NCBI GenBank assembly: GCA_963924565.1
Contig: OZ004613.1
Coordinates: 9,672,001-9,736,000 of the forward strand
From: Ascidiella aspersa
Lineage: Eukaryota
DNA: 64,000 bases
Reading direction: 5' to 3'
In this document: positions 9,982 to 64,000 of the stretch, in pieces
Position numbering within the stretch: the first letter of the stretch is position 1
How the letters are laid out: the number at the start of each line of letters is the position of its first letter
The notes under the pieces: generated by a model
What the model saw: the letters and a program-made list of their open reading frames with translations, nothing else
Told to the model about the DNA's origin: nothing
The model's database searches: none
Translations under genes and position numbers: made by a program

Positions 9982-10105
9982 AAAACGGCCGCCGACTGCC
10001 ACGGAAAGCGCTACTGCGGGCTGCTGGTTCACCACAGGGTGTTCGGGGACGACCCCTGTCCCGGAACCACCAAGTACCTGACCGTCAACTACAAATGCAG
10101 ATTGA
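9982..10105 (+). CDS. EVA1C: EVA1C-like exon: C-terminal half of SUEL domain 1
   Basis: ttccag|AAA...TTG A|gtgagt; FGDDPCPGTTKYL motif. Confidence 0.93.
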
Positions 10106-31100: not shown

Positions 31101-34100
31101 ACAACCATTCAAATTGAATCTTCACCGATGAAGCGATAGCTTTCAGCCGACGAGAGGGTTCGGCCACGGGCGACCAAATCTCAATCGCAGATTCAATTCT
31201 CGCCTGTCGTTTATCGAACTTCGCGCCAAAGTTCATTTCGTTTTCCACCGAAGCCGCCCACGCCCCCAGCCGCAATTGGCGTCTCGTTAAAGTAAAGCGA
31301 CTTGACTTTTTGTGCGCATTTTGTTATGTGCTTTTTCTGGCCGAACCGTTTTGACTCGATTGCGATTGCGGCATGATTGGTTTTAAACGAGAAATTGCAA
31401 GTCAGGTACATTTTGTGCTTTACAGGTTTCTTAAATTCACTTGAAACATTGTTTGTTATTATGGAACCTGGTCCGGTTAAGTTTGAGTACAGCGTTGTGC
31501 AATAGCGCCATGTTAAACTTATACAATAACAAGTGAAAACAGCCTTTGTCCTGGTGGTAATAAAAACGCCCTTGTGGTACACTACAGGGTTGTGTCCGGC
31601 TAGAAAAAATAAACGAATAACCATATTTCTAAATAATTACCGGCACTTTTAAACTATGTAGAATAATACACAAAAACGTGCTCGGATATGCGTGTTAGGA
31701 TTGTAGAACTGCTTTCCAAAAATATGTTAAACGGACACAACAGCCAACTTGCTAAGAGCTATTTGCGTAATTCAATCCCACCGAACGGCGTAAGAACCAC
31801 GGTTTAAACAAACATGTCTCTCGGCATCCGACTAAGGTATCGCATGGCGACACGCTAATGCATTTTAGACTGCACACCCATTTTAAAACGCGTTATGCAG
31901 GACAGTAAACGTACTCGAATCCCATTTCTTGCAAATGTCTTCACGGAAACTGAAGGAGAAATGTCATGACCTCGGCGCTGACGCAACGCTGTCGTTATGC
32001 CGGTTTCAGGTGTCTGATCATTTCTACTTGGGTGTTTTTTCTTTAGTTTGGCCGATGCTTGCTTCAGTCTGCAAAGTGCAATATAGTTTATGCCAGTCGT
32101 TAGCAATGGCGCGTTACCCGGCGGTCAAGTGGGCACCTGCCCCTATGCGTGACGTATTTGACCCCTTATGAAATTTCACCCCCCATCCGCTTTTTTGCGT
32201 ATTTTTTGCTGAACTTTCAGACTAGGAAACCGAAACCTTTTTCGTGCCCTAGAGGAGTGTGAAATTTATATACCAAGGTCTGTTTTTTTTCCTATAACTC
32301 TTTGCAAAGTCAAAACTGTACCTAGGCCTTTTTTCACTTAACCGTTTGATTGAACGGTAGCTAGTGATCACTCATGGTGGAAAGTTACCCTTATTTGAAC
32401 TGACCGCGGATGATTAAATGTAAAAACCAATTCTGAATGAAAACAGTTCTGTGTTGTATGCTGTTTTTTATGTTGTTCTTGAAACCCTGCTTTTATGTGA
32501 AAATAACAGTTTTTTTGCATTACTGTATTGTACTTTTTACATTACTGCATTCCTCTGAAGGCTTTCGGTGTATTATATGTCATACCAAGCTCGCCATACT
32601 TAATTCTTATTCGTAATAGCATGTCAAAACCCATAAAGAAGTAGGTAACATTTTGAACGTTTCGAATATCTTTTAAATATTTTAGCATCAAATGAATAAA
32701 TAGAAAAGGAACAAATAGACATTTGGAACAAATGAGATGTTGAAAATGTAAATAAAGAGATTTTCGAAAACGTTTAAACTGCTACCTACTTCCAAATGAA
32801 ATACCTACTTCTGTATGGGCTTCGATATTCTTACTACATCTAAAACCTTCCACCAACCGGCTCCAAAGTTAATTTATATTTTTTGCGCAGTTCCTCGACG
32901 AATCTTGACTGACCGTTTGCCGTCCTCGGTCCTTTCGGCCACCGCGGCGCCAGAGGAACTGACCACCACCCCCGAGCTTCTGCGGACCACCGGAAGTGCA
33001 TCTGTCCAGACGACCAAGTCCGGGGCCGTCCACCCAGAAAGTAAGCTTCTTTTTAGCACATCTTTGCACAGCGGGTTAGGTGTCATTTCCTTTTATCTGT
33101 TATAGTTTCCTTATATTTAAAGAAAGTGGTTTTACATATCGGAGCATAATGGTTGAAGGTTGTAGTAAGAATATCAAAGCCATAAAAAATTGGGTATCAT
33201 TTTGAACGCTTCTTCGAAACCATTTTTGAACGTTTCTTTGATACCTACTTCTGTATGGGCTTTGATATTCTTACTATGGGCATTAAATAGAATTGAATTC
33301 TGCGGTTTATTAAATTGAGTTTTACAGTCGATAGAAACAACTAAATTTCTTCTCCATTAAGTGTTTTCACGCAACTTAGGTTGAAAAACAAAGTAAACAT
33401 CATTTATTAAGTAAACTAATTTTTGCGCTTGTTTGTATCTAAAAAAATACTCGACGTTGCCCAGGTCCAACATGTTATTTACCAGTTGTAATACTATACC
33501 CCTAACTTGTGGTAATCTAGATTATTCCTAAAAGAAAGTAATTTTACCAAAGTAAAAAAAATATCTTTAAATTTTGGGGGTTGATTATACTTATTTGAAA
33601 AATATTGGATTACTATAGTTTTACATTTTTTACACCACGTGGTACACAAAGCACCCTGACGAAAAACACGAAAAAAAAAAAAAAAGAAAAAAATCTGTTA
33701 CAACAAATAAATTAACTCCATAGTTCGCACGGTAATTCCTCCGACGCCGAGCACAACCCTATTGACGTCATCAACAACAACAGCAACGACAACAACGACG
33801 CCAACCACAGCATCTACGTCACCGACTGCAAACGTCAGCAAGACTACGTCACGACGATCGAGCAAGAAAGTCGATAAAGGTTGGTCCATTAATCCTTGAC
33901 GGTTTCGAGTTTTTCGAAAACTTTGATTGATGTTTTTGCACAAGATCCTGATCTAGATAAGACAAGAGATATATGCGAGCTGAGTGATCGAAATGGTGAT
34001 GGTGTTTCAGAGTTTTTCGGCACCTTGCACTTTGAAATTGCAAGTTGTCATCATGATGAAGAGTTTCATGAAACAAAGTTTGCTACGCGAGATGAAATTG

Positions 34101-37100
34101 TCACTGAATTCCATCGGTTTACACCTTTAAGTGCATTTGAAGTACGAAATTACAGGATAGCTTCTGAGATTAGGCAAAGCAAACTTTGTTGTAGGTGGAC
34201 AACCCGTGTAGTTAAACATAAACTGATGAAACAATATTTGTAGTGTTATTTTACAGACAGGGTTCAATATACCCGGCTAAAAACAGTCCTGATATAAAAT
34301 TTTCAGTTTTTTATCTTCGTTTAGTTTAATAAAGTCCCAAATCGCACGAGGTGCTAAATGAAGTATAAGGCGTGAATTGATAAAAAATGGATTTTTTGGC
34401 GCCCATACACTTTTGCCCCACGTATCAAGGCAGGCACCTAAAGAAGACAAGCGGGCCGTGAACCTTGGCGGTTTTACGCCATATTGGCCCCGAAATGCTC
34501 CCGTCGATGAATTAATAATGATTTCTAAACATATTACACCATGCGAGTACAATGCACTACGTTTATTGCGCACTTATTGAAGTACAGATAGCGTAGAATA
34601 ACAACGGTGGCATGACTAAGATCTTTTTTGCTCCAAACGAGTGTTTTTGGAATACAAAACTCACTATACGCAACTATAGGACAGTGCTATGTTTAACTAG
34701 GACGGTATACTATTTAACTAATATGGTGCGTAAACCAAAACGTATAGCAATTTCAATATACAAAAGAAAAATAATAAAAGTAGGAATGTTGGACAGCGTG
34801 ACATTTACTCGATAACTCACAAAGGCACAGTATACTGGGTTTATTGTAGGCGTTATGCTGTATATGTACAGTGTATGTCGATTTTGGGCGAACCCTTCTG
34901 ATGTATTTTGTTACACATAAACGTATACCAAATAAAAAAAACAAAAAAAAACAGAGCAAAAATACGCACAGAACACCTCTGTAGAAACGGGGTACCGCAA
35001 ACGTTTCTATTAGGTAACGCATAAGAGGTTTTAAGTTAAACAAATGGTTCTTAGTCAAATGGACACATTGAAAAAAATAGGAAAGTGTATTGTATAGTAA
35101 GTGTATTTTCGAAAAGTGTATCATAGCCTTAATAGTTGATATTACTATTTTTGTACTATATTAGCTGTGGGAAAATTTGCTTTTTTGGAATATCGCGATG
35201 AGGTATTTCCTTACTGAGCCCTGGCCCCTTTTTATTAGGGTTTTACCTAACAACGTAATCACAATTTTCTTTCGAAAACCAGAATCTTCCTGAATCCGAA
35301 GAAAACAATTTACCTAACATATCTTAATCTAACCGAAATGCGACTTTGGTAAAACGCAACTAGTTAGCAAGTGGCTATAGGAAAGTTTGAAAACCACTTA
35401 CGTAGATTCTGCGGAATAAGTCTCAACGAATGTACTATAAGATAAAGACTTCTCTTATAAAACCTCGTCCGTCTGTTATTTGTGACAAAACATAATTTTT
35501 CGTTTTTAACGACCGTAAAGCATTCACTTTGGAACACCGAGATCAAAGTAACCGTGCTTGTCGGTGGGTAATTCCCCGGGGGCCAGCTGACCCCTCTTCG
35601 CCCTGTTGGGGACTTCTACCGTAGCCACGTACTTCTCGTCCAGACCTTCGACGCGCGACCTGCGTCCTGGGGCTATGGGGGTACAGTAGGGGGTCTCGAC
35701 GGGGTCGGGCGGTGACAACTTGAGGGTGACGTTCTTTCGCGACCCCTTACTCTTGCCGCTGGGTATGCTTGGGGCTTTCCCCAAGTTCACCCAGCTGTGC
35801 ACGTCTTTGCGTCGCCCCGGCTCGGCCCCTTTCCCGGTCATCGACAGGTAACCCACCGAGGGACTTTCCCCGACTCGCAGCAGCTGTCCCGCTTTTGGGG
35901 GGTCCGGGTTGGGTTCCGACAAACCCCCGGGGCCTTGGACTTCGTTCTGCGGGAAAAGAAGCGTCGGGGGCGGGGGGAGCGGCAAGCTTTTGCTGGTCTC
36001 CGCTTCCTTGTGCATAATATCCGTCTTTGGATGCTGGCTTGTCTCGCCCGTTGTGTGTCGCTTACTGTGGCGATGCATCTTGGAGCGGCGCGGGCTTTTG
36101 TAGTGGACGCTGGACTCGGCGGCCTTGGGCGCTGCGAGACTGTCGGGCGGCGGCGTCGAGTCCTCGTCTGCGAGAAAATATTGGTGTGGTTTGAGGGTTA
36201 AGGGTTTTGCTAGAAGTTGTGTGGTAAATTGTGCACTAGGCCGGTTGTTTAGTCTGGACGTGGCCAGGGTTTTAATTTACACGTCAATTTTTTTATTCTA
36301 ATCAAGAAACTGCTATATTTTGTTTCCCGACCTGGGGCATCATTGTCATTTATCGGACAGTGACATTCTTCCTGCAACACATTTTCAGGATTTTACAGTG
36401 AACGGTCATGGCCTTGTTGAAAGTCGTAGCAGTAGATGTTTCTCTATATTCCTAAAGCAAATTTGGGAACTCGCTAGTTCCCGATAAGTTGTCAATTCGG
36501 ATGTTTAAAGCTGTTTTTAAACCGGTTAATTTTTCGCAGCGTTCCCCTTGATTGTCAAAGCGGCAAATCTAGTCCCTTACATACAGTACCTTCGATGTCA
36601 TAGCGGCGAAATTTAACTACCTCTTACACCTTGATGACGTCAAGCTACGCGCCTGAGAATTATCCTCGTAAATCCTGACTTAAATGAAATGAACACATTT
36701 AGCGTAAACCCACCAGAGTACATCCCGTCAAACGAGCTCTCGCTCCACATGGACGTGTTATCGTCCTCCAAGCCCAAAGTAGATCCGGTGGCGGAGGACA
36801 CAAAGATCCTACTCCTCCTACCAGATGGCTCCCGGAGGAGCGACATGTCCTCCTTGGCAACCGTGTCGTACTGATGCGTCTTTGGAGGATTCTGATGGTT
36901 GTGGTCCTCATCTTTCTTCGGCGACCCTCCGAGCTTCTTAAAGATGCTCTTCAGATCCAGTTTTGTCTTCTTGGCCGGGAGCGGCACCATCGGAGCGTCG
37001 ACGTCATTCGTTTCGTCACCAGTGACGTATTTCACGGAGGGTACTGAAGACGAAATAATCGATTTTTATGCTAACGATATGGTTTCGAATGTAACTTCGA

Positions 37101-40100
37101 AAGATGATCAAATTACCCAACAATCTGTTTTTTGTGCGTGGTTGTAGGTTGTAGTAAGACGTAGTAAGAATATCAAAGACCACACAGAAGGACATCATGT
37201 TGAAAATGAGTAAAGAGTTTTTCGAAACGGTCAAAATGATATCTACTTCTGTATTGGCTTTGATATTTATTCTTTTTGTGGTAGTTTAGGAAAATCGTTG
37301 GTTTTGTCTTTCGTAAAGTTGTCATCGGTATTCTATTATATGTTCGGTATTAATTGCTTTTAATATGAAATTTACATTCGTTTTTGGTAAATTGTATTTT
37401 GGCGCAGCCAGGAAGCGACAGCGTCTTCGTCACGAGCAAATTACCTCACCCGGCGTCACACGTGAGAAAGGACTTCGCTTTATGCAAAGTGCCTGGGATT
37501 TTTGCATTTAAGGGTGTGTCCGAACCGCTTTAAACCCTTTTCGAGTGGCTTCGCAATCGGCGCGCAATTTAACGAGCCCCAGGGCGATTTTCAACTTGAA
37601 TTACAGGAGTTTTCTTGAGTTCGGACGACGAAAGCAATCAAGTTTTAAAAATATCGTTTCAAGAGACCTAATTTGTCCTAAAACGCCAAGTTTTTGGCTA
37701 GACTGGTTTCAAAAATGACATCAACTAACTGGCGATACAGCTGATGGGAATTTTTAGTTTCTTAAGCGAAATTGCACCACCTGTCCGTAATCTAATTCCC
37801 GATATGGCTGTGTGGCTTAAATTGAAGTATTTTGGGCAGATAATGTTTTCCAGACTTGCGAGTCCCATGCTGTCTGATCAGCAGTATATATATTTGCAAA
37901 GATTTTGGGTTCATTACTCTATTTCGATGGAAACTAAAATGTTTTGATAATGAATTTCAGAAACAAAAAGGTCGAGTAGATTAAATGAAGAAATCATCTT
38001 GATTAAGACGTTTCAATACGAAATTGCGCTCCACCTTTAATGGTGATGTTTTGATTCACTTCTCAGTCACATTAACTGAAGATGATACAAGTTCGCATCG
38101 AAACGTCTTAATCAAGATGATGTCGTTCTACGCGACCTTTTTTGCTTTCAAATTCATTACCAAGCTACATTACAGATACGTGCATACTGCATAGTGTACC
38201 CCAGAATTTATTCTTGTATAACAACTTTGGCCTTATTTGATCCTATACCGTGAGGGTTGCGATCGTCTGTTGGCTTTTGGAAGAAAGCGGTTGCTTTTCT
38301 GTTGTCCCTTGGAGAAGGAACTCGGCTCCATCTCCGTTTACTTTCGGACGGTTCATTTCTCTTCTGCAAGTAATAAAATAAGGACAGTTGTTATTTCCTG
38401 TGACTTAGTTCCAAGCATTTTGAGTTGTCTTGAAAGTCAAAGACGAACGACAATTATCTCAAGAGTTGTCAAAGTAACTTTGCACAGGCACTAATGGAAA
38501 TATTTCAATTGGATTTTGTGCACCATATGGCTCGAAAAACAACATTTTGAATATGGTTGCAGCTAACATTTGGTTATTTTTCGGTTTTCTGATATAGTAC
38601 TGGTGAACTTTCAAACTGTAACAAACAATACCTTGAACATCGACTCAGCGTTTAAATTAAAATAAAACACTCGGTCTGAAAACTTTCTTAACATACGGCA
38701 GTCGACAGGGAGCAGACCGATTTTTATATTTCGACCGAACGAACTATTTGCCGAAAAGCTGGCTGACCCGGTTCGCGATGAGGTTTAAGTTGCCATTTCG
38801 ATCCACGCCAAATTGCCGCTTTTAGTCGAGGAGCCACCAAAAAAGACTGCTCTTGTTTATGGAGGCTTTCTATTTTGACGGCGGCCGGCTTAAGAATGCC
38901 AAGCGCGAAATTGGCAGGCTGACAGGTGCCAGCAGCGCGAGGCGCATTGCAACATACCGTTTCCGGCGTCTGCAAAGGTTGAGAGACTCGAGACGCGACG
39001 CCAAATGCGTTAATACCTTGCTGACTGACGGTTTGAATGGCGATTTTGCAGCCTTGACATTTTGAGATCTGTAGCTGACATGGGTCGTGACCACTTTGGC
39101 CCAAACAGGAAAAATAGAATTCTTGCGGTATTAGAAAGCGCACTTTTCGCGACTGAGTTAAAAGTTTTGCCCTTTGCCTTTTTCCGGTTTGGGACAGTCG
39201 ATTTGGCAAGGTAAAACGAGATAACGAACGTTTATTTCAAATAACTTGAAGCAAATAAAATTCCACCACAGGCTAGTGTTATATACTGGCTAATGCATTG
39301 CTTGCATACGAATTCTCGTCGGCTGACTAATTTAGTTTTGTCAACCGGGGCTATATGGTGCTCATTTAAAATGAACAACATTTTTTTATTCACTACTTGT
39401 TACCCCAAAGGAAAAAATCCTCACCTTATATTATTCTCATTTTTGCGTATTCAACCATGGCAATGACGTCATTTGGGATCGGATTGGACATATACTTTTT
39501 GCTCGTGTTGTTAACAACGTACACCTAACGCCATCACATGCGGATCAATGATACAGGCAAGGCAGGCTACAAAAAACAATTATAGCGGGCAGTCGGGTTC
39601 GAACTCACGACCCAAGCCATTCCGGGACTTTCGCTCCGCCAACTGAGCTACACAGGCTCAGAGAGGAAGCGAGTCGAGAAAAAACGTTCTGTTAGTACGA
39701 GCAACTTTACATTGAAGCGCTTTCATTTATGGCAACAACATGGAGTTTTGACGTCAAAATAATCGCAAAATACTTGACTCCAACAAGGCAACGTGTACGC
39801 ATGCAAAAAAAAAAACTGGGTCTTGGCTTTTCCTTACCGCTTCAAGTGCAGGTCCGAACACACTGTTGTCGACCTGTACTCCCTCAGGATCCGTGACCAT
39901 CACCGAGATGCGAAGAGGGTTGGCTTGATTGAATCGCCCGGCTTTGGCGGCCTGTACAACAAGCGATGGCGGTGCGTTAAAGGCAAGGGTATTCTTGAAG
40001 AAATGAGGGCCGAATTTTTCCTGTGCCTCAGGCTATAGCCTTGTTAATGGTTAATCCGGCACTGGGTATGAGTGACACATGGACGCTATAGGAGCAACGG

Positions 40101-43100
40101 CGAAATGCGACTCCCGTGTCGGTCAAAGATCGCACGTTAGATGGGCCGGTGCGATCGCGCCACTGTCAACAGTTGCATACGCAGATCGCAAAAATCTCGT
40201 GAGACACGAGCTTTGATGGGATGTTTGAGAAATGTGAGACCCGTGTGTTTGGAATTTAGTTTTGTGTTCGTGAATTTTGAGGCACTTGGAAAACCAAATT
40301 TTTCCTCGAATTTTCTGCTTGTTGCCGATTTTTGCTCGTTGGTCAGTTATCGCAATGTTTAACAGAACAAGTGTAGAATTCCATTTGAAAACTGAAAATT
40401 AGGGAAATGAAATTGTACACATGTTGGCTCATGAAAAAAAGCCTAGATTTCTTGGCGGTTGCGAATCTAGGGAAACTTAAAAACATAGTGAAAACATAAA
40501 ATATAAAATAAAAAAACAGGTGAAAAAAAGGAGGAAAATAAATTCGTTGGCCTTTCTTCCCAATGTATAAAAACTGAAAAAAGGTTTTGAACTTTTCACA
40601 GGAGTGAACGTTTATGACACCAATATGGGATTTGCTTATAAATCAAAATCAAATAAATTTTGAAAAAAATATCATTAAATGTATCGAAATCAAAACCGCA
40701 CAAACGCGAATACCTTCCCTGGTGGACGACGTCGCGCCTCTTCTTCGTCGACTACGTACTCGTTCCCCTTCGTCGGCGGACACGCCTTTGCCACGCCCCC
40801 TTTGCCTCCACCACACTCAACCTCCGCTCGCTCCTCAGCTTCCGCAGTCGATCCTGCGGAGGACCTCGAGAAGAGGCGGGCTCCTCTTGAGATGCTCTCG
40901 TAGAGGTGATCCGAGGCTCGGGCGATCCGGCTCGCGACGCTAAGATGGTTGGGATTAGATCCTCCGGAAGAACCACCGCTCATGGCCGCCTCTTTGATCT
41001 TCATCCGTCTTCTTTTGGCTTCCTCCTCTGTCTCTTTGTAGCCGCTCCTGGTACCGGATGCCGCTTCCAGCTCGAAGACCGACTCCTCTGCCGAAGAGAG
41101 GTGGCGTTAGTAGGAGAAGTGCGATTTATAGGGGATTTTTTAGCTTTTTTATGGTTGTTACTTTGCTATGGAAATTAAATACCAATTTCACGCTTGAACA
41201 CTTACACAAACATTAGTTAACACAACTTTAGTTTGTCTAACTCAATTCTCACAGAATAGATTTGAAAACATCAATGGCCAAGAATATCTTTGTCACTTGT
41301 GTCAAAGCTTCCCGCTTCATGAATTACACTACTTTTAGTTCAGCAAAAAATTACATAAAAAAATGTACATTAAGTTACGATATCATATGATCACCGAAGA
41401 GTTCCTATCCCAGAACGCTACCTTTAACAACAAGTACTTGTGAACAAGTCTAAAATAATAACTTTAGCAAAGGGCTGAAGGCATCTTAAGATTTACTGTT
41501 ACGTCTCACGGCTTATCGAATCGTGAGAGCTCACTGAATTAGACCAAAGTTTTTTTTTTTTTTGTAACGTTCTAACATTGGGTAATTACTGAAAAGGTTG
41601 TATCGAGCTCTTTGAATCTTGACAAGCAACATTCATAGAGTCAACTAATTGATATTTAAAGGAAGTGGTCAAAAATTACGATCAGAGCCCATTTTTTGTC
41701 GAAAAAGGCAATCAAATCTAAGCACCCTTAATACCAACGCCACATACCCAATATGACGAGTGCGCTTAATGCCAGCCACCTTCGACCCGAAAACGCAAAA
41801 TACATAAAACAAAAATCGAAATACTTACCTGCTATGCTCGATAACTGTCATTTGTGTCAGCGATTTTAAAGTACTCACCAGCTATGCTCTTCAGTTCCAC
41901 CGCCTGGAACATGTTATCGGACGCCGCTCGATTCTTCTTCTTTCTTCTCCTGCGCCGGTTGCTCCTCCTGTGCCAGTAGATGCAGAAACAGATGATGGTG
42001 ATGAGGAGCACCAAGACAAAGAGAAGAGCGATAAGCCAGGTCTGCCAATCGGAGCTCGAGCTCGGCTCCGGAAGACCTTGAGATTGAGAGGATTTAAAAG
42101 CGTTTGCTCAATGTTTTTAACTTGAACGAAGTAAAGTGTATCTTCTACGAAAGAAAGTGTATCTCCTACAAAGTAAAGTGCGAGGTTTCGATTGTTGGAC
42201 ATTCACTAATAAGTCTAATAGTGGCAGAAAAAATGATCAAGAACATACAGCTAAAATTTTAACCTCCTTTGTTTCACAGTAATGTAAAATTCCTGCTATG
42301 ATGGACTTAACGTATACTGCAACATGCCGAAATTTAACTTTTTTCTTCTTTCAAAAGTTAGGCACGGATTATCAACTGAAATATCAAAACGTTTGTAAAG
42401 TGACTTGTGACTTGACAAGTTAGTTACGACAATCTGCTTACCTAACGTCCGGCACTGCTTTTCCATTCTGACTACATTCTTGCAATCGGTCGACGGAAGG
42501 TGGATGCCACACCACTGCTCTCTGTACCGAACCTAATAGATAAAATAAAACAAATCATCATTAGTGAAACCGATCTGCCCCTTTTCAGGCTTAAAGCGTC
42601 AAGTCGAACGCCTTTGCGTGTCCAAAGGCGTATATACCACTTGAACTTTTTATCTCAGGTTTTCAGTGGCTATTTTATGTGGAAACGGGTTTGAACAGCG
42701 TCGTATTGAATCGTGGTGCTTATTATAACGCAATGCCTCATAGCCTGGTATTTTTTGCCAGTTATTTGACCGTGTATCGTTGACGTTGATAAAAAAAAAA
42801 AAAAAGGTGTAACTTGTCTTCAGTCCTCACCTATATACTTGTTTCTGCGTATAGCATGAATGGTGTGCCTTCAAAACCTTATCGCCCCGAAATCCTCAGA
42901 GTTGAACCTTTACCTGTTTGTCGGCTTCGTCTTGCTCGGTTTTCCAGCCACCCCACTCCTTCCAGTCGAGAAACGCCAAGCATGAAGGTGACTTTCCGGG
43001 AAGAATGCAAGAAACAGCAGTTTTCTCGGTGGTGTAGTTGCAGTCCACTACTAGATCAGCGGTACTGCCAACACAAGGACCTTTTCCAGTCAAGTATGAA

Positions 43101-46100
43101 ACATTGAGCTTCGATAAGACCTCTACAGCTCCAAGTTAAGCTTCGAGTCGTTTGAATTCTGGGACTGGTTTATTTATTTATTTCTGGGACTGGTTTATTT
43201 ATTTATTTATGGGACTGTTTTTCTGGGATTTTCGCACTGGTTTATTCAGGTTAAAAGGGTATATACGCAAGTTAATATATCTCGAAGAACTAAAACGGTG
43301 AAAAGCCGCTAATTGCACTGCTTAGGACTTAGATGTTACCTAAAGGAAGTCTCGTAAATATTTTTGTGATTTAACAGTGGAAGGAAACAATTCTTTCAGG
43401 TAATTTTTAGCGAAACCGCTAGTTGTTGTATCGCCGTGAAGGCGACCTCTTTAACGCGACCTCTGTGACAAAGTCGGCGCCATCGTTTACACAAAACTTG
43501 ACTTTCACTCGCGGTCAGTTGATTAACTAGAGGAGATGCTTCAGGCCTTTGACGTGACGCTAGGACATATGGTCGCCGATCGGTTTTGTTTGTTTTGAAG
43601 ATACTCAGCCGATAAGGCCGTCTCGTTTGAGGTATCTCCTGGCGGTTTAATGTACGCCCTCCCAAAGATTAAATGCAGATATTAATTCAGAAATGGCATC
43701 TGGCTGCTGACAGTTTTTATTAACAACGAGATAATGCAAACGCCGCTCAAAATTCGACAGAAGGCTGCTTTATATATATATCCTCGAATTCGGTTTTATT
43801 TCCGTTTGTGGCGCGCAGAAGGCGAAGATAAACAACGTACTTACGTATTGCAAACATCGGGTTGCATCGCAGATCGGCATCCGTCGATCAATCTACCTTG
43901 AGCCATGGCCTGACGGGCTTCGGAACACTGCGCCAGGCACGACAAGGGCACGTTGTTGGTCGGCTTCCGCTGCGCCACATTCTTTTTCCTGTCGGCGATC
44001 AATATCGAGATGAAAGCGCTTATTGTATCGTGATCAAAGCGGTGGAAACTACAGGCTTTTGACAGACTGTCCAGTGTCCAGCTTTTCATAATTGCCGCCG
44101 TACGTTTTTTTTTGCTCATGACAAAATAAAGCTAAAACTGGCCAACACTTGCAAAGCAACCGTGTGTTATGTCGTTTTTTGGATTGTAAATAGAAATGGC
44201 TTCACTTGATAAAGTGTAAAGCAATCACAAAACTAACCCTGGATTATTAAATGCACTTGTCTTGTCCGCACTATAATCGGGTCTGAAATTGGGCCTGGAG
44301 TCAACAATGGAGTACGGCAACGCAGACCTCAATGTTAATTAGCGAATGCCAAGCTTTTACCCAATCTTTGGAGTTAAAGAACTGCCTTATAATCAATAAT
44401 TTTAGCCCAGTATATCAAAGCAATGTTTTGGTTTATAGTTTATATTTCCTTGCAGTTTTTAGTTTATATTTCCTACGGGTTGCCCTATATAAACCTTGAC
44501 TTATACCCGATGCCTTCGGAAAGGCTAACTGAAATGAGTAGGCCTAATCAGGATTATCGTGTTAGCAAAGCCAGAAGCCAGGATAGAAACAACTACCCTG
44601 AGGTAAGGTTCCAACTCGCCACCTCCGGCCAAGCCGGGACCTAAGTTGACTCTGTATACGGTATAGTGTTTTAGTAGTAAACACACGCAGCATTTTCGTT
44701 AAAAGTTTTTCAGCATTGCAACAATAAGCACGTCCATTGCGCTTTTGCCTGTAAAACAGCATCCGCTCTGGGGCATAGTGGTTGGCTGGTGGTAGAAAGA
44801 CGTAGTAAGAATCTTAAATCCCATACAGAAGTTAGTAGCATTTTGAACGTTAAGAGTATCTCTTTTTTTATTCATTTTCAACATAGATTAAGAGATAATT
44901 AAAAACGAAGAGATATTCGAAACGTTCAAAATGCTACCAACTTATGTATGGGCTTCAATATTCTTAAACTACGTCTTACTACAATCTCCATTCCTCCAAC
45001 TATGATGCTTCAGAGCGGCTTTGATATTCTTACATCATCCGCTTATGCTTTTGGTATTTTTACTCCCACTCATCTTACAATGATTCTTTTGTGGTCGTTG
45101 TAACAGTGGTGGTTGTCGAAGTTTTCGTGCTGGTAGTGCTTGATTCCACGATGCATCCTGGACACTTGGCACTCTCGTATTGCAGATGGAGTCCCTTGCC
45201 GCCTACGCAGTTGATACTCGGGTGGTCGGGCTGCGACCCGCCGTAACACCTGCGCACGAGTACGAGTTAAAATGCGAGTACGGAGTATCAGAACGAGTTT
45301 GGCTATGGGCATTGTGTTTAAATTTAGTTATCGTACGGATACGGGTCCACGATAGTGCATAGTGTAAAAAGGGAAACGATAACTTTTCCGGTTTATGGAA
45401 AGTTTTGAAGATCTTTCTTCATTAGTTCGGACTTGATTTTAGATTTCGTGCATTTGCAAAGTTTTAAAGTTATTCTGTGAAACTGTTATAGCCTATACTG
45501 GCGGCTTTATGTGTTTTTCTAGCACTGGTTTGTTTCTTCTTTGAATTATACGGAGAAAGTGCAACCTTCTATCCACCGAAAAAAGCTAGAACACAGCACG
45601 AATGATACTCAGTCAAAATAACGATCGCGTATGCAAATGTTCTGCCTCTCTCCCACAACGAAACCAAATTCAATTTCGGATCCACTTTAAACGTTACAGC
45701 ACAAAAGATATACAAGAACTCACCCCCTCTCTCGTTTTCGGTAGCAGGTCGCGTTACAGGCGCCATACGCACCCCACGAACCCCAGTTACCATCGCACTC
45801 GCAGAAGCTGGTCTGCGTCACCTTGCAGTCGTTCAGTGTGCTGCAATACCGAGACACCTGACAAAAGAAGACGTTTTATTAGTGATTTGATAAGTGTTGC
45901 ACGCCACGAGCGATTTGCGTATATCTCACCACGTAAAACAACTGCGACAACAGGGGGAATCCAGGATTTAGGTCTGGGGGCAGGCGATTTTTTAGAATGA
46001 CGTCACAAAGTACGCCACACACTCTTTTTTAATTTAGTGCAATAAATGTACGGATCAGGTGTTATCATTACAGTTTGACGTTTTAGTTATTTTTGGTCGG

Positions 46101-49100
46101 TATCTTGTAAGCTGCTTTGACTGGTTCTAGCTTGAGGGCCAACTGACTGGAAAACTATTTTGTGTTTTCATTGGTCTGTTTGCTGCTGTGTGAGCGTTTA
46201 GTTAGACAAATAAACGGTTATCACAATATATCTTTCCAGTCAATTCGCATATACATTACAACAAGTTACAATAGCCACATTTGTAAAATAGGAAGTCAAA
46301 TCCAAGATTCCAATATTTATCTTCTGGTATCGGAACCTTCACATAGCATTGTATAAGTGAATATATATATTTTGAATTTTCGTGAGGGACAACTAAAAGT
46401 AATTTTTGTTCCTGTCAAATCGTTTTGTCCAAATTTGACAAAGTCGTTGGTGTAAAGACGATTCTTTGATGCAAATGGCTAAGCTTAGGTTATGACTATT
46501 TGCCCAGCTCTATATTAATGGCATACGTTTTAATTATTACTGCCTTACTCATGGTAATTTAAACACATGTTACATTAAACAAATGAAACGAAAACATGCA
46601 GTTCTTCGAAAAATCGGTTCTCACAAATTTCACGGATGACGTATTCCTGTCGCTTCGATGACGCGTTTTGGCGCTTCATCAAGCTCTAACACAAATCGAC
46701 AAACGCTTTTACATAATTTAACGAGGTTGTCATTCTTCCTGTTGCTGCATATCCTCTAACGCGAGCTGACCCATTGCGTAATCGTTTAGATTTAAACAGC
46801 TCTCACAACTCTTGATATTCGAGTTTTCGGATCCGCGTGGGACAAAATAATCGAAAAACAAAACGTAAAATCGGTCACGTGGTTTGTTGTGACACGTGCC
46901 CTGAAGAAATTCCCCGTTATATATTTACTCTAGACATGCTTGCAACTTATAAACAAACAATTTTTTTGAAAACGCATTGTCAAAAAACAGCTAAATATTT
47001 GATAGGTGTTTAGGCTGTTAAATAATAAAAAAACAGGTAAAAATATGAATTTCTTATTATAAACAGAAACATACATTTCGCCATATAAACCCAGGCGTTT
47101 GTCAGTTGACATATGTATTTTATTTGTAGCTTGAATCTTTTTTTTCAGCTTTTTTACGTTTAAAGGGGTTTCAGTTAAATCTAATGGGATAATTTTTTCA
47201 AAAGGCCAAAATGTGGATAATGGGTTATTATCGTCATCAATGATTCAGCAGTTTATATCGATATACATCATTGGTCAATTACCCAGTGTTATTTCAAGTT
47301 CACGGTCGTCAGCGTGCTGACCTAACCCTGCAATTTCAAACGATTACGAAATTTCCACTCTTAACGAGGGGAAATCTAAACCGCTTTTGGCAATTTTAAG
47401 CTTTTCGGCGATGGTCTAGAATACTACCACATTTTCATATGGGGGTTACTATTACTAACACTATTTAAATTGCGAGTTAGCGTTTGGGTTCGGGTGGGTC
47501 AAGTATTATCGTTAATTTATTTTCCCATAGTGCTAAAATCTTGGTTTTCCGTTAATGTTGACTTTCAACTGATATTTGTTCGGTATCGTTCACGACGTAA
47601 TAATGGGAGCCATGGATAGCAGTCAAATAAACCTGAGTATATGAGTTCCAACATCAGGTTTTCGACTCCCCTTTTTTGGGATGACAATGTTAACACTTTT
47701 TGAAATCGGACATGTAGCCTAACTGTCTTTTGCTGTGGAATTCTGTGTAAATTTGAATTCATAGCAACCTACTTCGTGTTTGCTTGAATCAGTGATCAAT
47801 CCGTTCATTAGTTTTGTAAACAATTTAAAGTTTATATGAAGTTCAAAAATACGGGGTAGATTACTAACATTAATAAACTTATTTGATTCTTATTTAAGAT
47901 CAATTTTTATGTACATTTAAGGGAAATAAGTAAATTTACCAGAAATATTTTGATTAAAAACATACTAAAGCCAATAAGTCAATGCATTTGCCTAGATACC
48001 CAAAGACTAAACTCTTTTGCCTATAAGTGACTTAGCGTCAAGTTAAGTAATGTTATCCCAACTAGTTATGTCTATCAATTTTAAAAATACTTCACACTGC
48101 CGTTTTGCAAGAATTTACAATAAAAACGCGTCGCATCACTGCGCAAAAAAATCGGGCGCTCCTTAATTGAGGAACAATCACCCCTAATGCTCAAGACACG
48201 TACCCCAACACCCCCCGTTCGCAAAACCTACCTTGGTCGACTTGCTTGTATCGCACGGAATAGGACAAGGTGTCCTGCTCGAAAGTTCCATCGTACCTCC
48301 AATGCAGAGATCGCCTACAGTTGGCGGACATTTGCTCACATTCTCAATTAAGACGCCGTTCTGGCAAAGCTTTGCGCCGCAGTACCTTCACGACAAAGGA
48401 ATGTGGAATCTTTTCAGCCGCTAAACGAATAGTTTATTGGTCGGTAGCTTGGCGACTAGAGCCTTAGATCGACAGTCGAAAAAGTTTCATTTACCAAACA
48501 AACCGCCGTGATAGACAAACGATTGTTTGGTTGCACGTCCGGTCATTAAGATCCAAGCCAAGTGCAAAACTTAAAGACCGAAATCAACTTGTGGTAGGAA
48601 TATAAATTCCTATAATGAACGTTTCGAATAACTCTTTATTGATTTGATCGTTGAAAATGAATAAATAAATATTCTAAACGTTCGAAATGCTACCTACTTC
48701 GGTATGGGGTTTGATATTCTTACTACAACCTCCAACCATTATATTCCGAAATGAATTTGGTTAGACTTTAACGATAAACATATTTTAATTTTAATTGTTT
48801 TATCCAGTGTTTTCATTATAAAGATTGAATTAAGCATTTGGTTTGTGTATTATTAGCTTACACCCTGATTAATATTGTGTTATTTTTTTAGATACTGATA
48901 ATGCGTTTAGGAGTGAAATAAGTTTATCATATAGCATCCAAACAAACTGATTTCAGCTTTTCCAAGCTCTGTGTTTAGTTTAATATTTATCATTAATCTG
49001 CAACCAGAATCGTTTGTTTTTTCACCATTCGGATTCAGGCAAGCTCTGTTATCCAAAAGTAAAATCCCGATTATTAGTGTTTTTCACTGCGTGGCCTTTA

Positions 49101-52100
49101 TTCTGTTTTGCGGAGTTGAAGCAGCAAAAACGCCCGGTTACCTGAACCTAGTGTAGGAGCACTGGCTGGTGCACTGCGGGTCCTGTCGATTATAAATCCT
49201 CCATTCGCCTTGGTCCTGGCCTAGAGCGGTGTCCAGGATCAAAAGAAGCAACGCTAGACGGACAAATTCCATCGCGCCCCTGTTCCCTCTTCGTCACGTG
49301 ACGGCTGCTCGTTCAATGCAAAGCCGCCACTCGCTCGAGTTGTTGTAGTCAAACGATGCAGACGCGTATTAAGGTATACGCGTTTGTAAACAGAGGCTTT
49401 TGGGTTCAGTTTTAGGCAGTTTTAGTGCTAGGAACCTGAAACGGATCCAGTTTTATAGATATCCTCGACTATTGCAACAAAACGATAACTTAAACTACTA
49501 AAATTCGTTTTTAACGACAAAAGAGTCTTGAATATTACCCATAGCCAAAAATAATGTAATGATTTCTTTAATTTTACGCAATTTTTCCCTGAGCACATAG
49601 TCAAATTGCAATTGACGTTTATACTTTCTCGGTTTCACCTCGGCTTGGCTGATTTACAATACAACGCTCACCTGTACTGCTCTATTGTCTACTAAAGCAA
49701 CCTCCACGCATCCTTAGGCTTTCGCTTTATACACGGCTCTCACCTGACGCGACCATCAATCAATCATCGGTCAACCCGCGCGAACTTTACCCTCTGAAGA
49801 CCCCACCTATAGGCCCCCGGATCACCCCTCAAAAACCCCTTTCACCTGCGTTAAATCATCCGTCTTGATTCAACTTTTCCCGAACGAAGCCGTATTTGAC
49901 GATCTGCTTTCAGATTCGCTTCGAAACGAGTTATCGCATTGACAACAAACAAATGCACTTTGCTTGTGTTGTGACTTGCGACAGCGCAAACACGCGTAAG
50001 CACCGCGCGCTGCTTAATTACGCGATTGTCCTTTCCTGGTGATGATGCGACGCTCTCATTTCCGCCCAGCGTTGCAAACCTCTGCCCTATCGCTGTCTTT
50101 CTATCTGCTTATGTACAACACTATATAGCTGGTGCATAGGTGCATGGCTCTTTGTGTGTTGTGTTGTAACGGTGTTAGCCAGTTGTGCTCGGTGCGCCGA
50201 CGCGATGACGGTGATTCAGCGCAACTGTTTCGTCACAAAGCTGATCGCCCGAACCACATCCGGTCGCTCTCTGGCGCAACCGGCGGCGAACATGCGCCCG
50301 CCTTCACTGACAACGTTCAACGTGCCGTAGCAGGCGCTTAGCAAGTCCGCAGTATGTAATCATTCATAACTAGATATTGTTTTCACTCGTTCAACAACAC
50401 ACTATCCAAAACGTTTGATGAAATTTTCTGATAAATACAACGAATCTCTCAATTCAAATTTACCGCTTTAAGTTCTCCGCGCAAATCACGTATTTACCTT
50501 CTTTTACGGGAACATCAATTTCTATACATAGGCGTTTATGAAATTTTCTCTCTTTTCAACAAAGATTCGGTTTGTTACGTATGGCCAAAACACGTCACTG
50601 GTCGTTGACTAGAAAGTTTGAAAGTTTATTTTTCGAGGTAAAGCGACCTGCTTTACGTAACAGTTAACATGTAAAACAAGTTGTATAGACCTAATGGTTA
50701 GATGTTGTAGTAGGACGACGTAGCAAGAAAATCCAAGCCCATATACAGAAGTAGGTAGCATTTTGAACATTTCGAATATATCTTTATTCATTTTTAACAT
50801 GTAATGTTGAGTTATTTAAAACGTTTCTGTATATGGGCTTTTATATTCTTGCGAAGTTGTATATAGACTTTCCTGTTTCACTGTTGGCTTACCCCTGGCT
50901 TGACTATGCCTTGACTTCCGCTTTCTAAACGACGAGCTTGTTGCTGTTGTTGCTGTTGATGTTTATTGAGGTTCAGGCCAGGCTAAATTGTCGTGACGCG
51001 CGCAACCTCCGACGTGTTTGCTACACGCGAAGACCCTGTTGGCCTGCCCTCAGTGGAATCAAGGTCGAAGAGTGAAAAATGAACGCACACAGGTTGATGA
51101 CGAGCAGTAATAGAAAATACGCTCATAAGGAACACGTGCGAACGCCAAATACGGAGATTGGCAGGCGCAGTCATTTCTTACTCAACAACGGCGTTGTTTG
51201 GCCGTCATGATTCTTAACCCCCGGGGAATTTTGCTTTAAAGTTCTTTAAAAGAAAATAGAGGACCAAAATCTTGCCTATAGAAATTCATTGTATTCACTG
51301 TATACTTTCTGAAACACATATATAGGTAGTTTCAAAAAAACATTTTCATTCGCACTGTTGATTTAAAAACGTGAATACAACATTTTAATACTTGCACAAA
51401 GTTGTATTAAACCTACACTTTACTGCAAGCTGTATTACCCGTAGCGTATAGCGCATAAAAATACTTAAAAAGTGTAAAAGAACATTTATTTATCATTTTA
51501 AATACAAAATCTAATCAAACAAATTCGTTTTGCAGACGCCGCAGCTAACGACAAATCTACCAAAAACCCGGCGCCCAGGCCAAGCAAGCGGCCTCCGCGA
51601 AAGCGCAAAACAACGACGTCGCCCTTCACGCCCAGCAGCATCACAATCATCAACCACTTCGCCAAGTCGGTCGCACCGCCCGTCGCTTCGCCCGCGGGAA
51701 ATCGGAGCCTGAATCCCCGCCGAATGGACTCGACTACCCCGGGGTCGTTCGACGTGGGTGCTTCGGCTGCGACCGCAATCGCCGAGACGCCGAACGGCGA
51801 CGCCGACAACGCGACCGTTCTCTTTCCGGTCCTGCGCAGTTTCATGGCGATCTCGTCGTACATAACTGGTAGGTTTTGTTTCGTCAACTCTAGGGAGAAT
51901 ATTTTGGCGATTAGGGGATTTGCGATAATATCGGTTCGGAGCCGACACCCGATGCCAAGCGGTAGAATCGGAATACTCGTCCGATTCTAACGTAGTATCG
52001 GTGCCGATCCGACATCAAATTAACTTCTGAATAAAAGCCATGTCTTGCGATCCAATCTAGAGTTTTCTACCTTAGACAAATTTAGAATATAGCTCGAACC

Positions 52101-61071: not shown

Positions 61072-61443
61072 ATTTGCTTATTTAAAGTTAATTTTGCTAT
61101 GAACTCGTTTTTAAACTTTTAAAATTCGCCAGGATTATTTTTAGGTGTTTTCCCCGCGACCATGGCGATAAAACTGGTAATCGGCCTTGCAATATTTATT
61201 TTAAGGGGCAGTTTTTATGTTCACAGAAATTAAACAAAAAATAGCAATAGATTGATATTAACTTAAATGGTTTAAATACATACAATATTTTAAACAATAT
61301 CATATTCTAACGAACACTGATAAAGTAATACTTAGTGAATAATGTTTTAAGTCGCCATGTGTTGTTCGTTAGTCGTGATTCAGGGGTTTTTGAGTCAAGT
61401 TTGTTTTAGGTGAAAATTGTGAAACTACGTAATTTTATTCAAT
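61072..61443. promoter_or_regulatory. Probable bidirectional promoter between FAM221A and PSMG1
   Basis: Divergent ATGs only 372 bp apart. Confidence 0.65.
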
Positions 61444-63940: not shown

Positions 63941-64000
63941 CTGAAGGTGGCCAAAACAAATTTTATAAACTTGAGTATCATTTTTTTAGATATATCAGCA

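What the first reader, a model, noticed from the sequence alone, without database searches (positions are those of the whole stretch)
35524..49272. Orphan TSP1-type receptor gene nested antisense within the EVA1C intron
A complete 14-exon gene fills intron 33880-51535 on the opposite strand and is largely missed by the ORF track. Architecture: signal peptide, Cys-rich region, TSP1 repeat (WGSWGAY...C...RKRER.C), Thr-rich linker, further Cys-rich segment, degenerate second TSP1 (WKEWGGW...RYRE..C), TM and a ~550-aa tail. It does not fit UNC5, SEMA5, BAI/ADGRB or THSD7 as I know them. Established: C. elegans EVA-1 is a co-receptor for SLT-1/SAX-3 and for the TSP1-containing cue MADD-4 with UNC-40. 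Inference: host and nested gene may be a co-regulated or mutually exclusive receptor pair in guidance, adhesion or recognition.
Basis: partly seen in the sequence, partly recalled or inferred. Interest (0 to 1): 0.8.

Follow-up and report, generated by a model that had tools for sequence, protein, structure and literature searches.

The report
Uncharacterised sea-squirt thrombospondin-repeat membrane receptor gene
A real, intact gene for a single-pass membrane protein with a thrombospondin repeat and a long tyrosine-motif tail lies backwards inside an intron of an EVA1C-like gene; two other sea squirts have the same unstudied gene, so it is a new member of a familiar kind, not a true orphan.

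Summary
All have GT-AG borders and matching phases, giving 939 codons. The gene lies inside the 33880-51535 intron of a plus-strand gene with SUEL-lectin and FAM176/EVA1 domains.

The order is signal peptide, an ectodomain with 28 cysteines, one thrombospondin type-1 repeat (TSR) split over exons 3 and 4, a Thr-rich linker, a Trp-ladder module next to the membrane, one membrane helix, and a disordered tail of about 580 residues.

It is not an orphan. Colinear orthologues exist in Ciona intestinalis (864 aa) and Clavelina lepadiformis (825 aa). NCBI calls both "uncharacterized protein". No named family matched.

The first TSR is supported by sequence search. The "second TSP1" rests on a conserved motif only.

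In the tail, 7 of 11 tyrosines are invariant across the three species, against 20% identity overall. This suggests a phosphotyrosine docking scaffold.

A subsample of one RNA-seq run showed no reads on the exons. Nothing supports a functional link with EVA1C.

Verdict: real gene, new member of a known kind, modest interest.

The parts
49142..49272 (-). Exon 1. ATG at 49272, signal peptide (hydrophobic core LALLLLIL), first 2 Cys. Donor CAG|GTAACC, phase 2.
   Evidence: An in-frame stop lies 8 codons upstream of the ATG.
48232..48385 (-). Exon 2. Cys-rich, 6 Cys, one N-x-S/T sequon.
   Evidence: Splice sites. Colinear weak tblastn match to Ciona residues 42-80 (E 0.58). 4 of 5 Cys shared by the two orthologues are kept. 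Single copy in the genome.
45724..45857 (-). Exon 3. Cys-rich lead-in and the first half of the thrombospondin type-1 repeat: WxxW motif, CxxTC, RxR.
   Evidence: Splice sites. On its own it hits properdin (E 9.4e-7) and thrombospondin-1 (E 1.1e-3) in PDB sequences; 18 of 19 hits are TSR proteins. 3 of 3 shared Cys are kept.
45079..45249 (-). Exon 4. Second half of the TSR (4 Cys), then a Thr-rich mucin-like linker.
   Evidence: Splice sites and phase. It completes the split Gly codon of exon 3. Alone it has no significant PDB or Pfam hit. The Thr-rich run is absent from the Ciona and Clavelina proteins.
43845..43988 (-). Exon 5. Cys-rich, 4 Cys. This is the least certain exon.
   Evidence: Splice sites; an alternative weaker donor/acceptor pair exists. 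The spacing C-x3-C-x15-C is the same as in both orthologues (read). The fragment aligner misplaced this exon.
42914..43064 (-). Exon 6. 3 Cys, then a WxEWxxW Trp ladder (start of the membrane-proximal TSR-like module).
   Evidence: 3 of 3 shared Cys and the W.EW..W motif are identical in all three species. No PDB hit. Single copy in the genome.
42442..42532 (-). Exon 7. Rest of the TSR-like module: RxR, WC, then two more Cys.
   Evidence: 3 of 3 shared Cys are kept. The Ciona counterpart has no PDB hit.
41879..42076 (-). Exon 8. Transmembrane helix, two Cys in the inner half of the helix (near its cytoplasmic end), a poly-basic stop-transfer stretch.
   Evidence: Only sub-threshold Pfam matches to transmembrane-type families. 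2 of 2 shared Cys are kept. The Ciona helix is the only confident part of the AF2 model.
40714..41087 (-). Exon 9. Cytoplasmic tail with conserved motifs AS-x-H-x-YE-x-I...R-x-FSR-x-S and NEY(V/I).
   Evidence: tblastn E 4.4e-4 (Ciona) and 8.2e-7 (Clavelina).
39838..40020 (-). Exon 10. Tail motif LRISV-x-VT-x-P-x-G-x-QV.
   Evidence: tblastn E 2.0e-4 and 1.8e-5.
38249..38363 (-). Exon 11. Tail motif RWSRV..P. Found only through the Ciona orthologue.
   Evidence: tblastn match at 38339-38280 (E 0.20, colinear). Splice sites and phases 0 to 1. The split codon gives Val before SVKY, as in Ciona.
36714..37043 (-). Exon 12. Tail motifs SVKY, H-x-YD-x-V, E-x-D-x-x-S-x-WS-x-S-x-FD.
   Evidence: tblastn E 3.0e-10 and 1.1e-6. 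Own-genome search with P0002 gives E 1.7e-7 here.
35524..36167 (-). Exon 13, the last coding exon, with stop TGA at 35524-35526. Tail motifs Y-x-x-M, KDV-x-SW-x-x-LG, KYV, HGY-x-x-L near the C-terminus.
   Evidence: This exon found Ciona P0002 among 1.84 billion representatives (E 4.8e-5, query 18-222 to 666-860 of 864). tblastn E 4.5e-9. AATAAA at 35236, about 290 nt past the stop, is a candidate poly(A) signal (inference).
33762..33879 (+). 3' part of the host (EVA1C-like) exon before the host intron. Thr-rich. Donor GT at 33880.
51536..51868 (+). Host exon after the intron. Acceptor AG ends at 51535; in frame with the upstream exon through a split GAC codon.
   Evidence: The host's last exon, 52239-53729, carries FAM176/EVA1.

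Best explanation
This is an intact protein-coding gene for a type I single-pass membrane glycoprotein of about 939 residues. It is the orthologue of Ciona intestinalis LOC100185917 and Clavelina lepadiformis LOC143464517, and it sits antisense in a 17.7-kb intron of the EVA1C-like gene.

Shown: the exon structure, the orthology, one genuine but divergent thrombospondin type-1 repeat, a conserved cysteine framework, a single membrane helix, and a long low-complexity tail with islands of strict conservation.

Inferred: it acts as a cell-surface adhesion or recognition receptor. The disulfide-rich ectodomain (the TSR plus a membrane-proximal Trp-ladder module) would bind a matrix or cell-surface ligand. 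The disordered tail would act as a phosphotyrosine docking scaffold. Seven invariant tyrosines sit in contexts that I recall as classical SH2-type consensus sites: YExI (Src-family-like), YDxV (Nck-like), YxxM (PI3K p85-like) and a C-terminal YxxL.

The nested position is most likely an ordinary gene arrangement. At most it would cause transcriptional interference with the host; nothing indicates that it reflects a shared pathway.
For: - Gene model: 13 exons with GT-AG borders and consistent phases, and no stop in any of the 8 split codons.
- Orthology: the last exon found P0002 in the representative library. There are colinear exon-by-exon tblastn matches to P0002 and P0003. In the own genome (308.6 Mb), the tail of P0002 matches only this locus: 3 of 14 matches at E<=1 lie here. 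Of the other 11, 8 cover only the TSR and 3 cover the stretch around the membrane helix. Exons 2 and 6 are single copy.
- TSR: exon 3 alone hits properdin (9.4e-7) and thrombospondin-1 (1.1e-3); 18 of 19 hits are TSR proteins. Ciona residues 112-175 hit thrombospondin-1 TSRs at 3.5e-6 and UNC5A at 2e-5; 13 of 15 hits are TSR proteins.
- Cysteine framework: exon 2 keeps 4 of 5 of the Cys shared by the orthologues, exon 3 keeps 3 of 3, exon 6 keeps 3 of 3, exon 7 keeps 3 of 3. The ectodomain has 28 Cys.
- Tail: 109 of 545 residues are identical in all three species, but 7 of 11 Tyr and 3 of 3 Trp are (Fisher one-sided p=0.0017 for Tyr).
- Membrane helix: it is the only confident segment of the AF2 model of the Ciona protein.
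Against: - No RNA support. In about 6% of one RNA-seq run (7.8 M reads), 68 reads lay on 41750-47749. 67 of them fitted only partly, on repeat fragments. None lay on exons 3-8 and there were no splice joints. This limits expression in that sample, of unknown tissue, to roughly a few TPM or less. It does not show that the gene is silent.
- Pfam's TSP_1 model does not hit the window exons or the full-length orthologues, even at E<=10.
- The second module has no search support.
- The Clavelina orthologue lacks the CxxTC cysteines of the first TSR, so even that domain is loosely constrained.
- The SH2-motif assignments are recalled consensus patterns, not tests. No ligand, partner or expression site is known.
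- The AF2 model is useless outside the helix (mean pLDDT 32).
Confidence: 0.6

Rival explanations
1. It is the fast-evolving ascidian orthologue of vertebrate THSD1 (Tmtsp). THSD1 is a single-span membrane protein with an extracellular TSR and an intracellular domain that binds focal-adhesion proteins. On this reading the gene would act in focal-adhesion and endothelial-type adhesion signalling.
For: The overall plan is the same: signal peptide, an ectodomain with a TSR-type module just outside the membrane, one membrane helix, and a long intracellular region. Passages of the THSD1 review PMC12189160 describe THSD1 as a single-span protein with an extracellular TSR, a helix and an intracellular domain that interacts with talin, paxillin and FAK. 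The size is similar (825-939 aa; THSD1's length is recalled, not checked). Tunicate proteins diverge fast (recalled).
Against: No search returned a THSD1. P0002 found only itself among 5570 word-sharing candidates. Its tail found only P0003 among 6204. The window's last exon found only P0002 as a real relative among 1.84 billion representatives. The Atlas feature search ranked THSD7A-type clusters first, at 0.80, which is chance level. No paper holds both THSD1 and Ciona. The ascidian ectodomain is rich in cysteines and has two W-motif modules. As far as I recall, THSD1 has one canonical TSR and a Cys-poor N-terminal part. I had no THSD1 sequence from a tool, so direct comparison was not possible.
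Confidence: 0.15
2. Host and nested gene form a functional pair. Either they are co-regulated or mutually exclusive in expression, or the TSR protein binds the lectin ectodomain of EVA1C.
For: The physical nesting is real. From established knowledge (recalled): C. elegans EVA-1 works with SLT-1/SAX-3 and with the TSR-containing cue MADD-4. Opposite-strand nested pairs can interact transcriptionally (abstracts of PMC12274878 and PMC13309782, seen only in the listing).
Against: No expression data for either gene was obtained; the stretch laid had no intronic or exonic depth apart from repeats. Conservation of the nesting was not testable. [quoted passage not shown]
Confidence: 0.07
3. It is a decaying or silent gene copy (an unprocessed pseudogene) that merely keeps open exons.
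For: No reads on exons 3-8 in the sampled RNA-seq. The exact species' protein is not in the protein collections searched.
Against: All 13 exons are open with intact GT-AG sites and matching phases over 2.8 kb of coding sequence. Cysteines, tryptophans and tyrosines are selectively conserved against orthologues that are only about 20-35% identical overall. This is the pattern of purifying selection. It is the only copy in the genome.
Confidence: 0.05

Closest known systems
Ciona intestinalis LOC100185917 (XP_078493145.1, 864 aa) and Clavelina lepadiformis LOC143464517 (XP_076818435.1, 825 aa), both 'uncharacterized protein'
   Same: Same colinear architecture, cysteine framework, Trp-ladder module, membrane helix with two Cys in its inner half, and the same set of tail motifs. 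These are orthologues.
   Different: Identity is only about 27-60% per matched exon. The window's protein is longer (939 aa) and has a Thr-rich linker that the others lack. Clavelina has lost the CxxTC cysteines of the first TSR.
THSD1 / Tmtsp (vertebrate single-span TSR membrane protein)
   Same: Single-span type I layout with an extracellular TSR and a long intracellular signalling region (passages of PMC12189160).
   Different: No sequence relationship was detected by any search here. The ectodomain here is Cys-rich with two W-motif modules. The tail motifs are not known from THSD1 (recalled). Membership could not be tested directly.
Thrombospondin type-1 repeats of thrombospondin-1, properdin and UNC5
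   Same: Exon 3 and Ciona residues 112-175 align to these TSRs with the WxxW, CxxTC and RxR features.
   Different: It is below Pfam TSP_1 detection and has a shorter loop after CxxTC. There is only one such repeat, whereas these proteins have 2 to 6 or other domains (Ig, ZU5, Death) that are absent here.
THSD7A/B
   Same: Type I membrane proteins with TSRs. They are the nearest clusters by language-model features, with a score of 0.80.
   Different: That score is at chance level by the tool's own calibration. THSD7 proteins are about 1600 aa with many TSRs and a short tail. Here there are one or two modules and a tail of about 580 aa.

Membership tests
Thrombospondin type-1 repeat (TSR/TSP1) superfamily | Significant sequence similarity to known TSRs, with the WxxW, CxxS/TC and RxR motifs | tested here: met
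   Window exon 3 against PDB sequences: properdin 9.4e-7, thrombospondin-1 1.1e-3, and 18 of 19 hits are TSR proteins. Ciona orthologue: thrombospondin-1 3.5e-6, UNC5A 2e-5. The motifs are read directly.
Thrombospondin type-1 repeat (TSR/TSP1) superfamily | Pfam TSP_1 (PF00090) at or above the gathering score | tested here: not met
   No TSP_1 hit for any single exon or for full-length P0002/P0003 at E<=10.
   0 PDB hits at E<=10 for window exon 6 and for the 77-aa Ciona counterpart. The A2 profile hits TSRs only with positions about 91-180. What remains is a conserved WxEWxxW...RxR...WC...C...C pattern and three low-confidence strands in the AF2 model.
UNC5 | Two Ig domains, two TSRs, and a cytoplasmic ZU5-UPA-death domain | tested here: not met
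   No Ig, ZU5 or Death hit in the window exons or the orthologues. The PDB similarity to UNC5 covers only the stretch that holds the TSR (Ciona residues about 89-179).
ADGRB/BAI | GAIN/GPS domain and seven transmembrane helices | tested here: not met
   There is one hydrophobic helix only and no GPS or 7TM Pfam hit.
SEMA5 | N-terminal Sema and PSI domains | tested here: not met
   No Sema or PSI hit. The ectodomain is only about 340 residues.
THSD7A/B | Ten or more TSRs, about 1600 aa, short tail | tested here: not met
   One TSR plus one TSR-like module, 939 aa, tail of about 580 aa. The Atlas score of 0.80 is only a chance-level lead.
THSD1 | Sequence homology beyond the TSR (ectodomain and tail) | not testable with these tools
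THSD1 did not appear. These are word-limited or single-exon searches, so a blank result is weak evidence.
THSD1 | Single-span type I protein with an extracellular TSR and an intracellular signalling domain | tested here: met
   The architecture is read. The THSD1 description comes from passages of PMC12189160. This is a likeness of layout only.
Opposite-strand nested gene | The whole transcription unit lies inside one intron of a host gene, on the other strand | tested here: met
   The coding span 35524-49272 lies within host intron 33880-51535. UTR ends are unknown, but 1.6 kb and 2.3 kb of intron remain on either side.
EVA1C / EVA-1 (host gene) | SUEL/rhamnose-binding lectin domain(s) plus a C-terminal FAM176/EVA1 region with a membrane helix | tested here: met
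   SUEL_Lectin 4.1e-12 at 9910-10167. A second lectin exon at 15647-15925 is only weak (E 0.028, below cut-off). FAM176 1.3e-7 in 52239-53729.

The most novel reading that the evidence does not exclude
The gene may define a tunicate-restricted receptor family in which a TSR ectodomain is coupled to a multi-site phosphotyrosine scaffold (YExI, YDxV, YxxM, YxxL). Its antisense nesting in the EVA1C-like gene may be conserved and functional. Either the two genes exclude each other's transcription in the same cells, or the TSR ectodomain is a cis or trans ligand of the EVA1C lectin domains. The latter would echo EVA-1 binding the TSR protein MADD-4 in C. elegans.
Probability: 0.07. Interest if true: 0.6.

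Novelty: new member of a known kind. Interest (0 to 1): 0.3.

Why it matters
The result adds a checked 13-exon model, and a third species, to an unstudied family of sea-squirt membrane proteins. It shows that the family's long disordered tail carries a small set of strictly conserved tyrosine and tryptophan motifs. That gives a concrete, testable hypothesis (a phosphotyrosine docking receptor) for genes that the databases list only as 'uncharacterized'.

It also corrects the 'orphan' label. And it shows that the attractive link to EVA1C currently rests on position alone.

For general biology the result is modest. TSR-bearing single-pass receptors and nested genes are both familiar.

Tried and rejected
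- **Pfam on single exons.** I scanned 10 stop-free segments and 8 exact exons at E<=10. The only results were sub-threshold membrane-helix look-alikes and DUF3439 on the Thr-rich run. These are composition effects and I rejected them.
- **PDB with the last exon.** One hit at E 0.73, which is noise.
- **P0001 (E 3.7e-7).** This is a tandem-repeat protein matched in 10 short stretches to a low-complexity part of the query. Pfam calls it Bflower_2. I rejected it as spurious.
- **The search for homologous proteins with exon 9.** Nothing, which is expected given the tool's length window.
- **Crude splice-site scoring.** My acceptor threshold was too strict, so I read the sites by eye instead.
- **Search for extra exons.** Between exons 2 and 3, 6 of 633 open AG..GT candidates passed my filters, and none was plausible. 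Between exons 10 and 12, none of 1020 candidates was convincing. Exon 11 was found only through the Ciona protein.
- **Alignment A1.** A global MAFFT of P0002 with the separate exons scattered the fragments, so I did not use it. I used mafft --addfragments in scripts instead. That run still misplaced exons 1, 4 and 5 and parts of exons 9-11, so I placed exons 4 and 5 by eye.
- **AF2 of the Ciona protein with a 2-row alignment.** Mean pLDDT was 32, so I ran no fold search. The second structure job was not used.
- **Atlas.** The best score was 0.80, which is chance level.
- **Metagenome scan with A2.** 109 pattern matches, none a relative.
- **Paper searches.** 0 papers for the LOC and accession identifiers and 0 for THSD1 plus Ciona. 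So I know of no publication on this family.
- **Earlier findings.** Nothing at this place and nothing for the combined words. The word 'thrombospondin' gave notes on other genes of the same genome that call it a sea squirt.
- **Alternative exon 5/6 junction.** I considered donor G|GTAGAT with acceptor ...GGAAAAG| and rejected it. Both sites are poorer, and the junction would delete two cysteines whose C-x3-C-x15-C spacing is shared with both orthologues.

Full report
**What is at the coordinates.**
An ORF beginning with Met at 49272 reads like a signal peptide, and the last open frame ends at the stop at 35524-35526.

I read the minus strand with its translation and found 13 exons: 49272-49142, 48385-48232, 45857-45724, 45249-45079, 43988-43845, 43064-42914, 42532-42442, 42076-41879, 41087-40714, 40020-39838, 38363-38249, 37043-36714 and 36167-35524. 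Every intron starts with GT and ends with AG, and most donors are close to GTAAGT or GTGAGT. The phases match at all 12 junctions. The 8 split codons read AGG, GGG, TTG, ACT, GGT, GAG, GTA and GAC, so none is a stop. The exon lengths sum to 2820 nt, which is 939 codons plus the stop.

Continuity rests on these phases.

My scans for further exons found nothing credible. Exon 11 was invisible until an orthologue pointed to it. Exon 5 is the least certain, because a weaker alternative junction exists. However, its cysteine spacing C-x3-C-x15-C is the same as in both orthologues.

**The host.**
On the plus strand, an exon ends with a donor GT at 33880 and the next exon begins after an AG ending at 51535, in frame. 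The host has a clear SUEL-lectin exon (E 4.1e-12), a second weak one (E 0.028, below cut-off), and a last exon with the FAM176/EVA1 family (E 1.3e-7). The host is therefore EVA1C-like, and the nested gene fills most of its 17.7-kb intron on the other strand. Downstream neighbours on the minus strand are a BtpA-family gene, FAM221 and SF3A3.

**Architecture.**
- Exon 1 holds the signal peptide.
- Exons 1-7 hold 28 cysteines.
- Exons 3 and 4 together encode one thrombospondin type-1 repeat, with a WxxW motif, CxxTC, RxR and then further cysteines. A Thr-rich run follows.
- Exons 6 and 7 encode a Trp-ladder module (WxEWxxW, RxR, WC, C, C).
- Exon 8 holds one hydrophobic helix with two cysteines in its inner half (near its cytoplasmic end), followed by a poly-basic stretch.
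- Exons 9-13, together with the end of exon 8, give a tail of about 580 residues rich in Pro, Ser, Gly, Lys and Glu.

**Is it a real gene? Orthologues.**
The last exon (223 aa), searched against 1.84 billion representative proteins, gave two proteins at E<=0.001. One (P0001) is a tandem-repeat protein hit in ten short stretches, and I reject it. The other (P0002, 864 aa, E 4.8e-5, 33% identity) matches query residues 18-222 to its C-terminal residues 666-860. P0002 is 'uncharacterized protein LOC100185917 [Ciona intestinalis]'.

A search with the tail of P0002 found one more protein: P0003, 'uncharacterized protein LOC143464517 [Clavelina lepadiformis]', 825 aa, E 8.6e-40. The two are 35% identical over their whole length, with a shared cysteine framework.

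tblastn of P0002 against the window gives seven colinear minus-strand matches:

| Exon | E value |
|---|---|
| 2 | 0.58 |
| 3 | 0.32 |
| 9 | 4.4e-4 |
| 10 | 2.0e-4 |
| 11 | 0.20 |
| 12 | 3.0e-10 |
| 13 | 4.5e-9 |

P0003 gives four matches, for exons 9, 10, 12 and 13, with E from 8.2e-7 to 2.2e-4. The window's species is therefore neither of these two.

In the window's own 308.6-Mb genome, P0002 gives 14 matches at E<=1. Three lie in this locus, eight are TSR-only matches elsewhere, and three cover the stretch around the membrane helix. Exons 2 and 6 match only themselves. The gene is thus single copy and the best reciprocal partner of the Ciona gene.

Of the cysteines that the two orthologues share, the window keeps 4 of 5 in exon 2, 3 of 3 in exon 3, 3 of 3 in exon 6, 3 of 3 in exon 7 and 2 of 2 in exon 8. 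The fragment aligner misplaced exons 1, 4 and 5, so they are not counted. Earlier notes of this scan on other windows of the same genome call it a sea squirt, which agrees with these orthologues.

**RNA.**
One RNA-seq run of the same species label was offered (X4). I laid it on 41750-47749, which holds exons 3-8. The tool read 7.8 M reads, about 6% of the run. 68 reads were laid, and 67 of them fitted only partly. They lay on two repeat patches (44750-45149 and 47350-47549). There was no depth on any exon and no joints. The first patch is an inverted repeat at 44806-44966 with another copy near 50743-50805.

This is a negative result. By my rough estimate, a gene at 1-2 TPM would have given only a couple of fragments on these exons. 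So the result limits expression in that sample of unknown tissue, but it does not show silence. The intact frame and the selective conservation argue against a pseudogene.

**What family?**
- *First TSR.* It is supported. Exon 3 alone hits properdin (9.4e-7), thrombospondin-1 (1.1e-3), ADAMTS-5, UNC5 and C8-alpha; 18 of 19 hits at E<=10 are TSR proteins. Ciona residues 112-175 hit thrombospondin-1 TSRs (3.5e-6) and UNC5A (2e-5); 13 of 15 hits are TSR proteins. The two-species profile gives the same picture. Yet Pfam TSP_1 does not report it, in single exons or in the full-length orthologues, even at E<=10. The Clavelina protein lacks the CxxTC cysteines. So the repeat is divergent.
- *Exon 4.* Alone it gives only noise.
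- *Second module.* It has no search support at all: 0 hits for the window's exon 6 and 0 for the Ciona counterpart. Its TSR-like nature rests on the invariant W.EW..W ... R ... WC ... C ... C pattern and on three long strands in a low-confidence model.
- *Other domains.* No Ig, ZU5, Death, Sema, PSI, GPS or 7TM domain is found.
- *Language-model look-alikes.* The top clusters shown are TSR families (by the tool's count, the ten best share a family or clan), led by THSD7A. The score of 0.80 is one that, by the tool's own calibration, shuffled sequences reach a third of the time.
- *THSD1.* This is the closest known layout: a single-span protein with an extracellular TSR, a helix and an intracellular domain that binds talin, paxillin and FAK (passages of PMC12189160). 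THSD1 never appeared, but those searches are weak for this purpose.

**The tail.**
Over exons 9-13, 109 of 545 residues are identical in all three species (20%). For tyrosine the figure is 7 of 11, and for tryptophan 3 of 3 (Fisher one-sided p=0.0017 for Tyr). The invariant tyrosines sit in these contexts: H-x-Y-E-x-I, N-E-Y-(V/I), S-V-K-Y, H-x-Y-D-x-V, Y-x-x-M, K-Y-V and, near the C-terminus, H-G-Y-x-x-L.

From recalled knowledge, YExI resembles the Src-family SH2 preference, YDxV the Nck SH2 preference, YxxM the p85 preference, and YxxL a general SH2 or sorting motif. This is inference, not a test. Other invariant islands are LRISV.VT.P.G.QV, RWSRV..P, E.D..S.WS.S.FD and KDV.SW..LG. A disordered tail with such islands is what one expects of a docking scaffold.

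**How it most likely works.**
Shown: a conserved, single-copy gene for a type I membrane protein with a disulfide-rich ectodomain that contains one TSR.

Inferred:
- It is a cell-surface adhesion or recognition receptor whose ectodomain binds a matrix or cell-surface partner.
- The WxxW and CxxTC motifs fit the recalled consensus sites for C-mannosylation and O-fucosylation.
- The Thr-rich run suggests mucin-type glycosylation.
- The two cysteines in the helix suggest palmitoylation.
- The tail recruits SH2-type or similar adaptors after tyrosine phosphorylation.

I give the whole statement 0.6. The gene being real and orthologous is about 0.9. The scaffold mechanism is about 0.4-0.5.

**The link with EVA1C.**
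Nothing here speaks for it beyond position. Nested genes are common (abstracts listed; I saw the listing only).

**Novelty.**
No paper holds the gene identifiers (0 of about 8.4 million texts). The family is therefore predicted but unstudied. In kind it is a TSR-bearing single-pass receptor, so it is a new member of a known kind. Interest is modest (0.3). The 'orphan' label and the functional pairing are not borne out. The conserved tyrosine scaffold is a small, testable addition.

Noticed in passing
window 44806-44966 (also 50743-50805, and ORF-like traces near 32815 and 20311-20655): There is a short inverted-repeat element (arms 64 nt, 84% complementary) in intron 4 of the nested gene, with another copy in the same host intron. 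The only RNA-seq reads laid in this region were partial matches to this element and to a second patch at 47350-47549. They are probably transcripts of other copies elsewhere. Several ORFs across the window share a 'GFDILTTS'-like translation, which suggests a dispersed MITE-like family.
   Followed up: partly
window 56442-58660 (-), 60277-61077 (-), 63726-63962 (-): Downstream of the EVA1C-like gene lie exons of a BtpA-family protein (E 3e-9 and 2e-12), a FAM221 gene with one 267-aa exon covering the whole Pfam domain (E 7e-86), and the C-terminal exon of SF3A3 (E 5e-25).
   Followed up: no
window 15647-15925 (+): The host's presumed second SUEL-lectin exon scores only E 0.028 (15.2 bits, cut-off 31.4). 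The second lectin domain of this EVA1C-like gene is either divergent or split differently.
   Followed up: partly
window 52239-53729 (+): The host's last exon is a single 497-codon open frame. After the membrane helix and the FAM176 region it runs into a long Gln/Pro/Tyr-rich low-complexity tail (many QQQ runs and PY-like motifs).
   Followed up: no
P0003 (Clavelina lepadiformis), residues about 115-150: The Clavelina orthologue keeps the WxxW and RxR of the first TSR but lacks the two CxxTC cysteines found in Ciona and in the window. This is an unusual loss of a disulfide within an otherwise conserved repeat.
   Followed up: no
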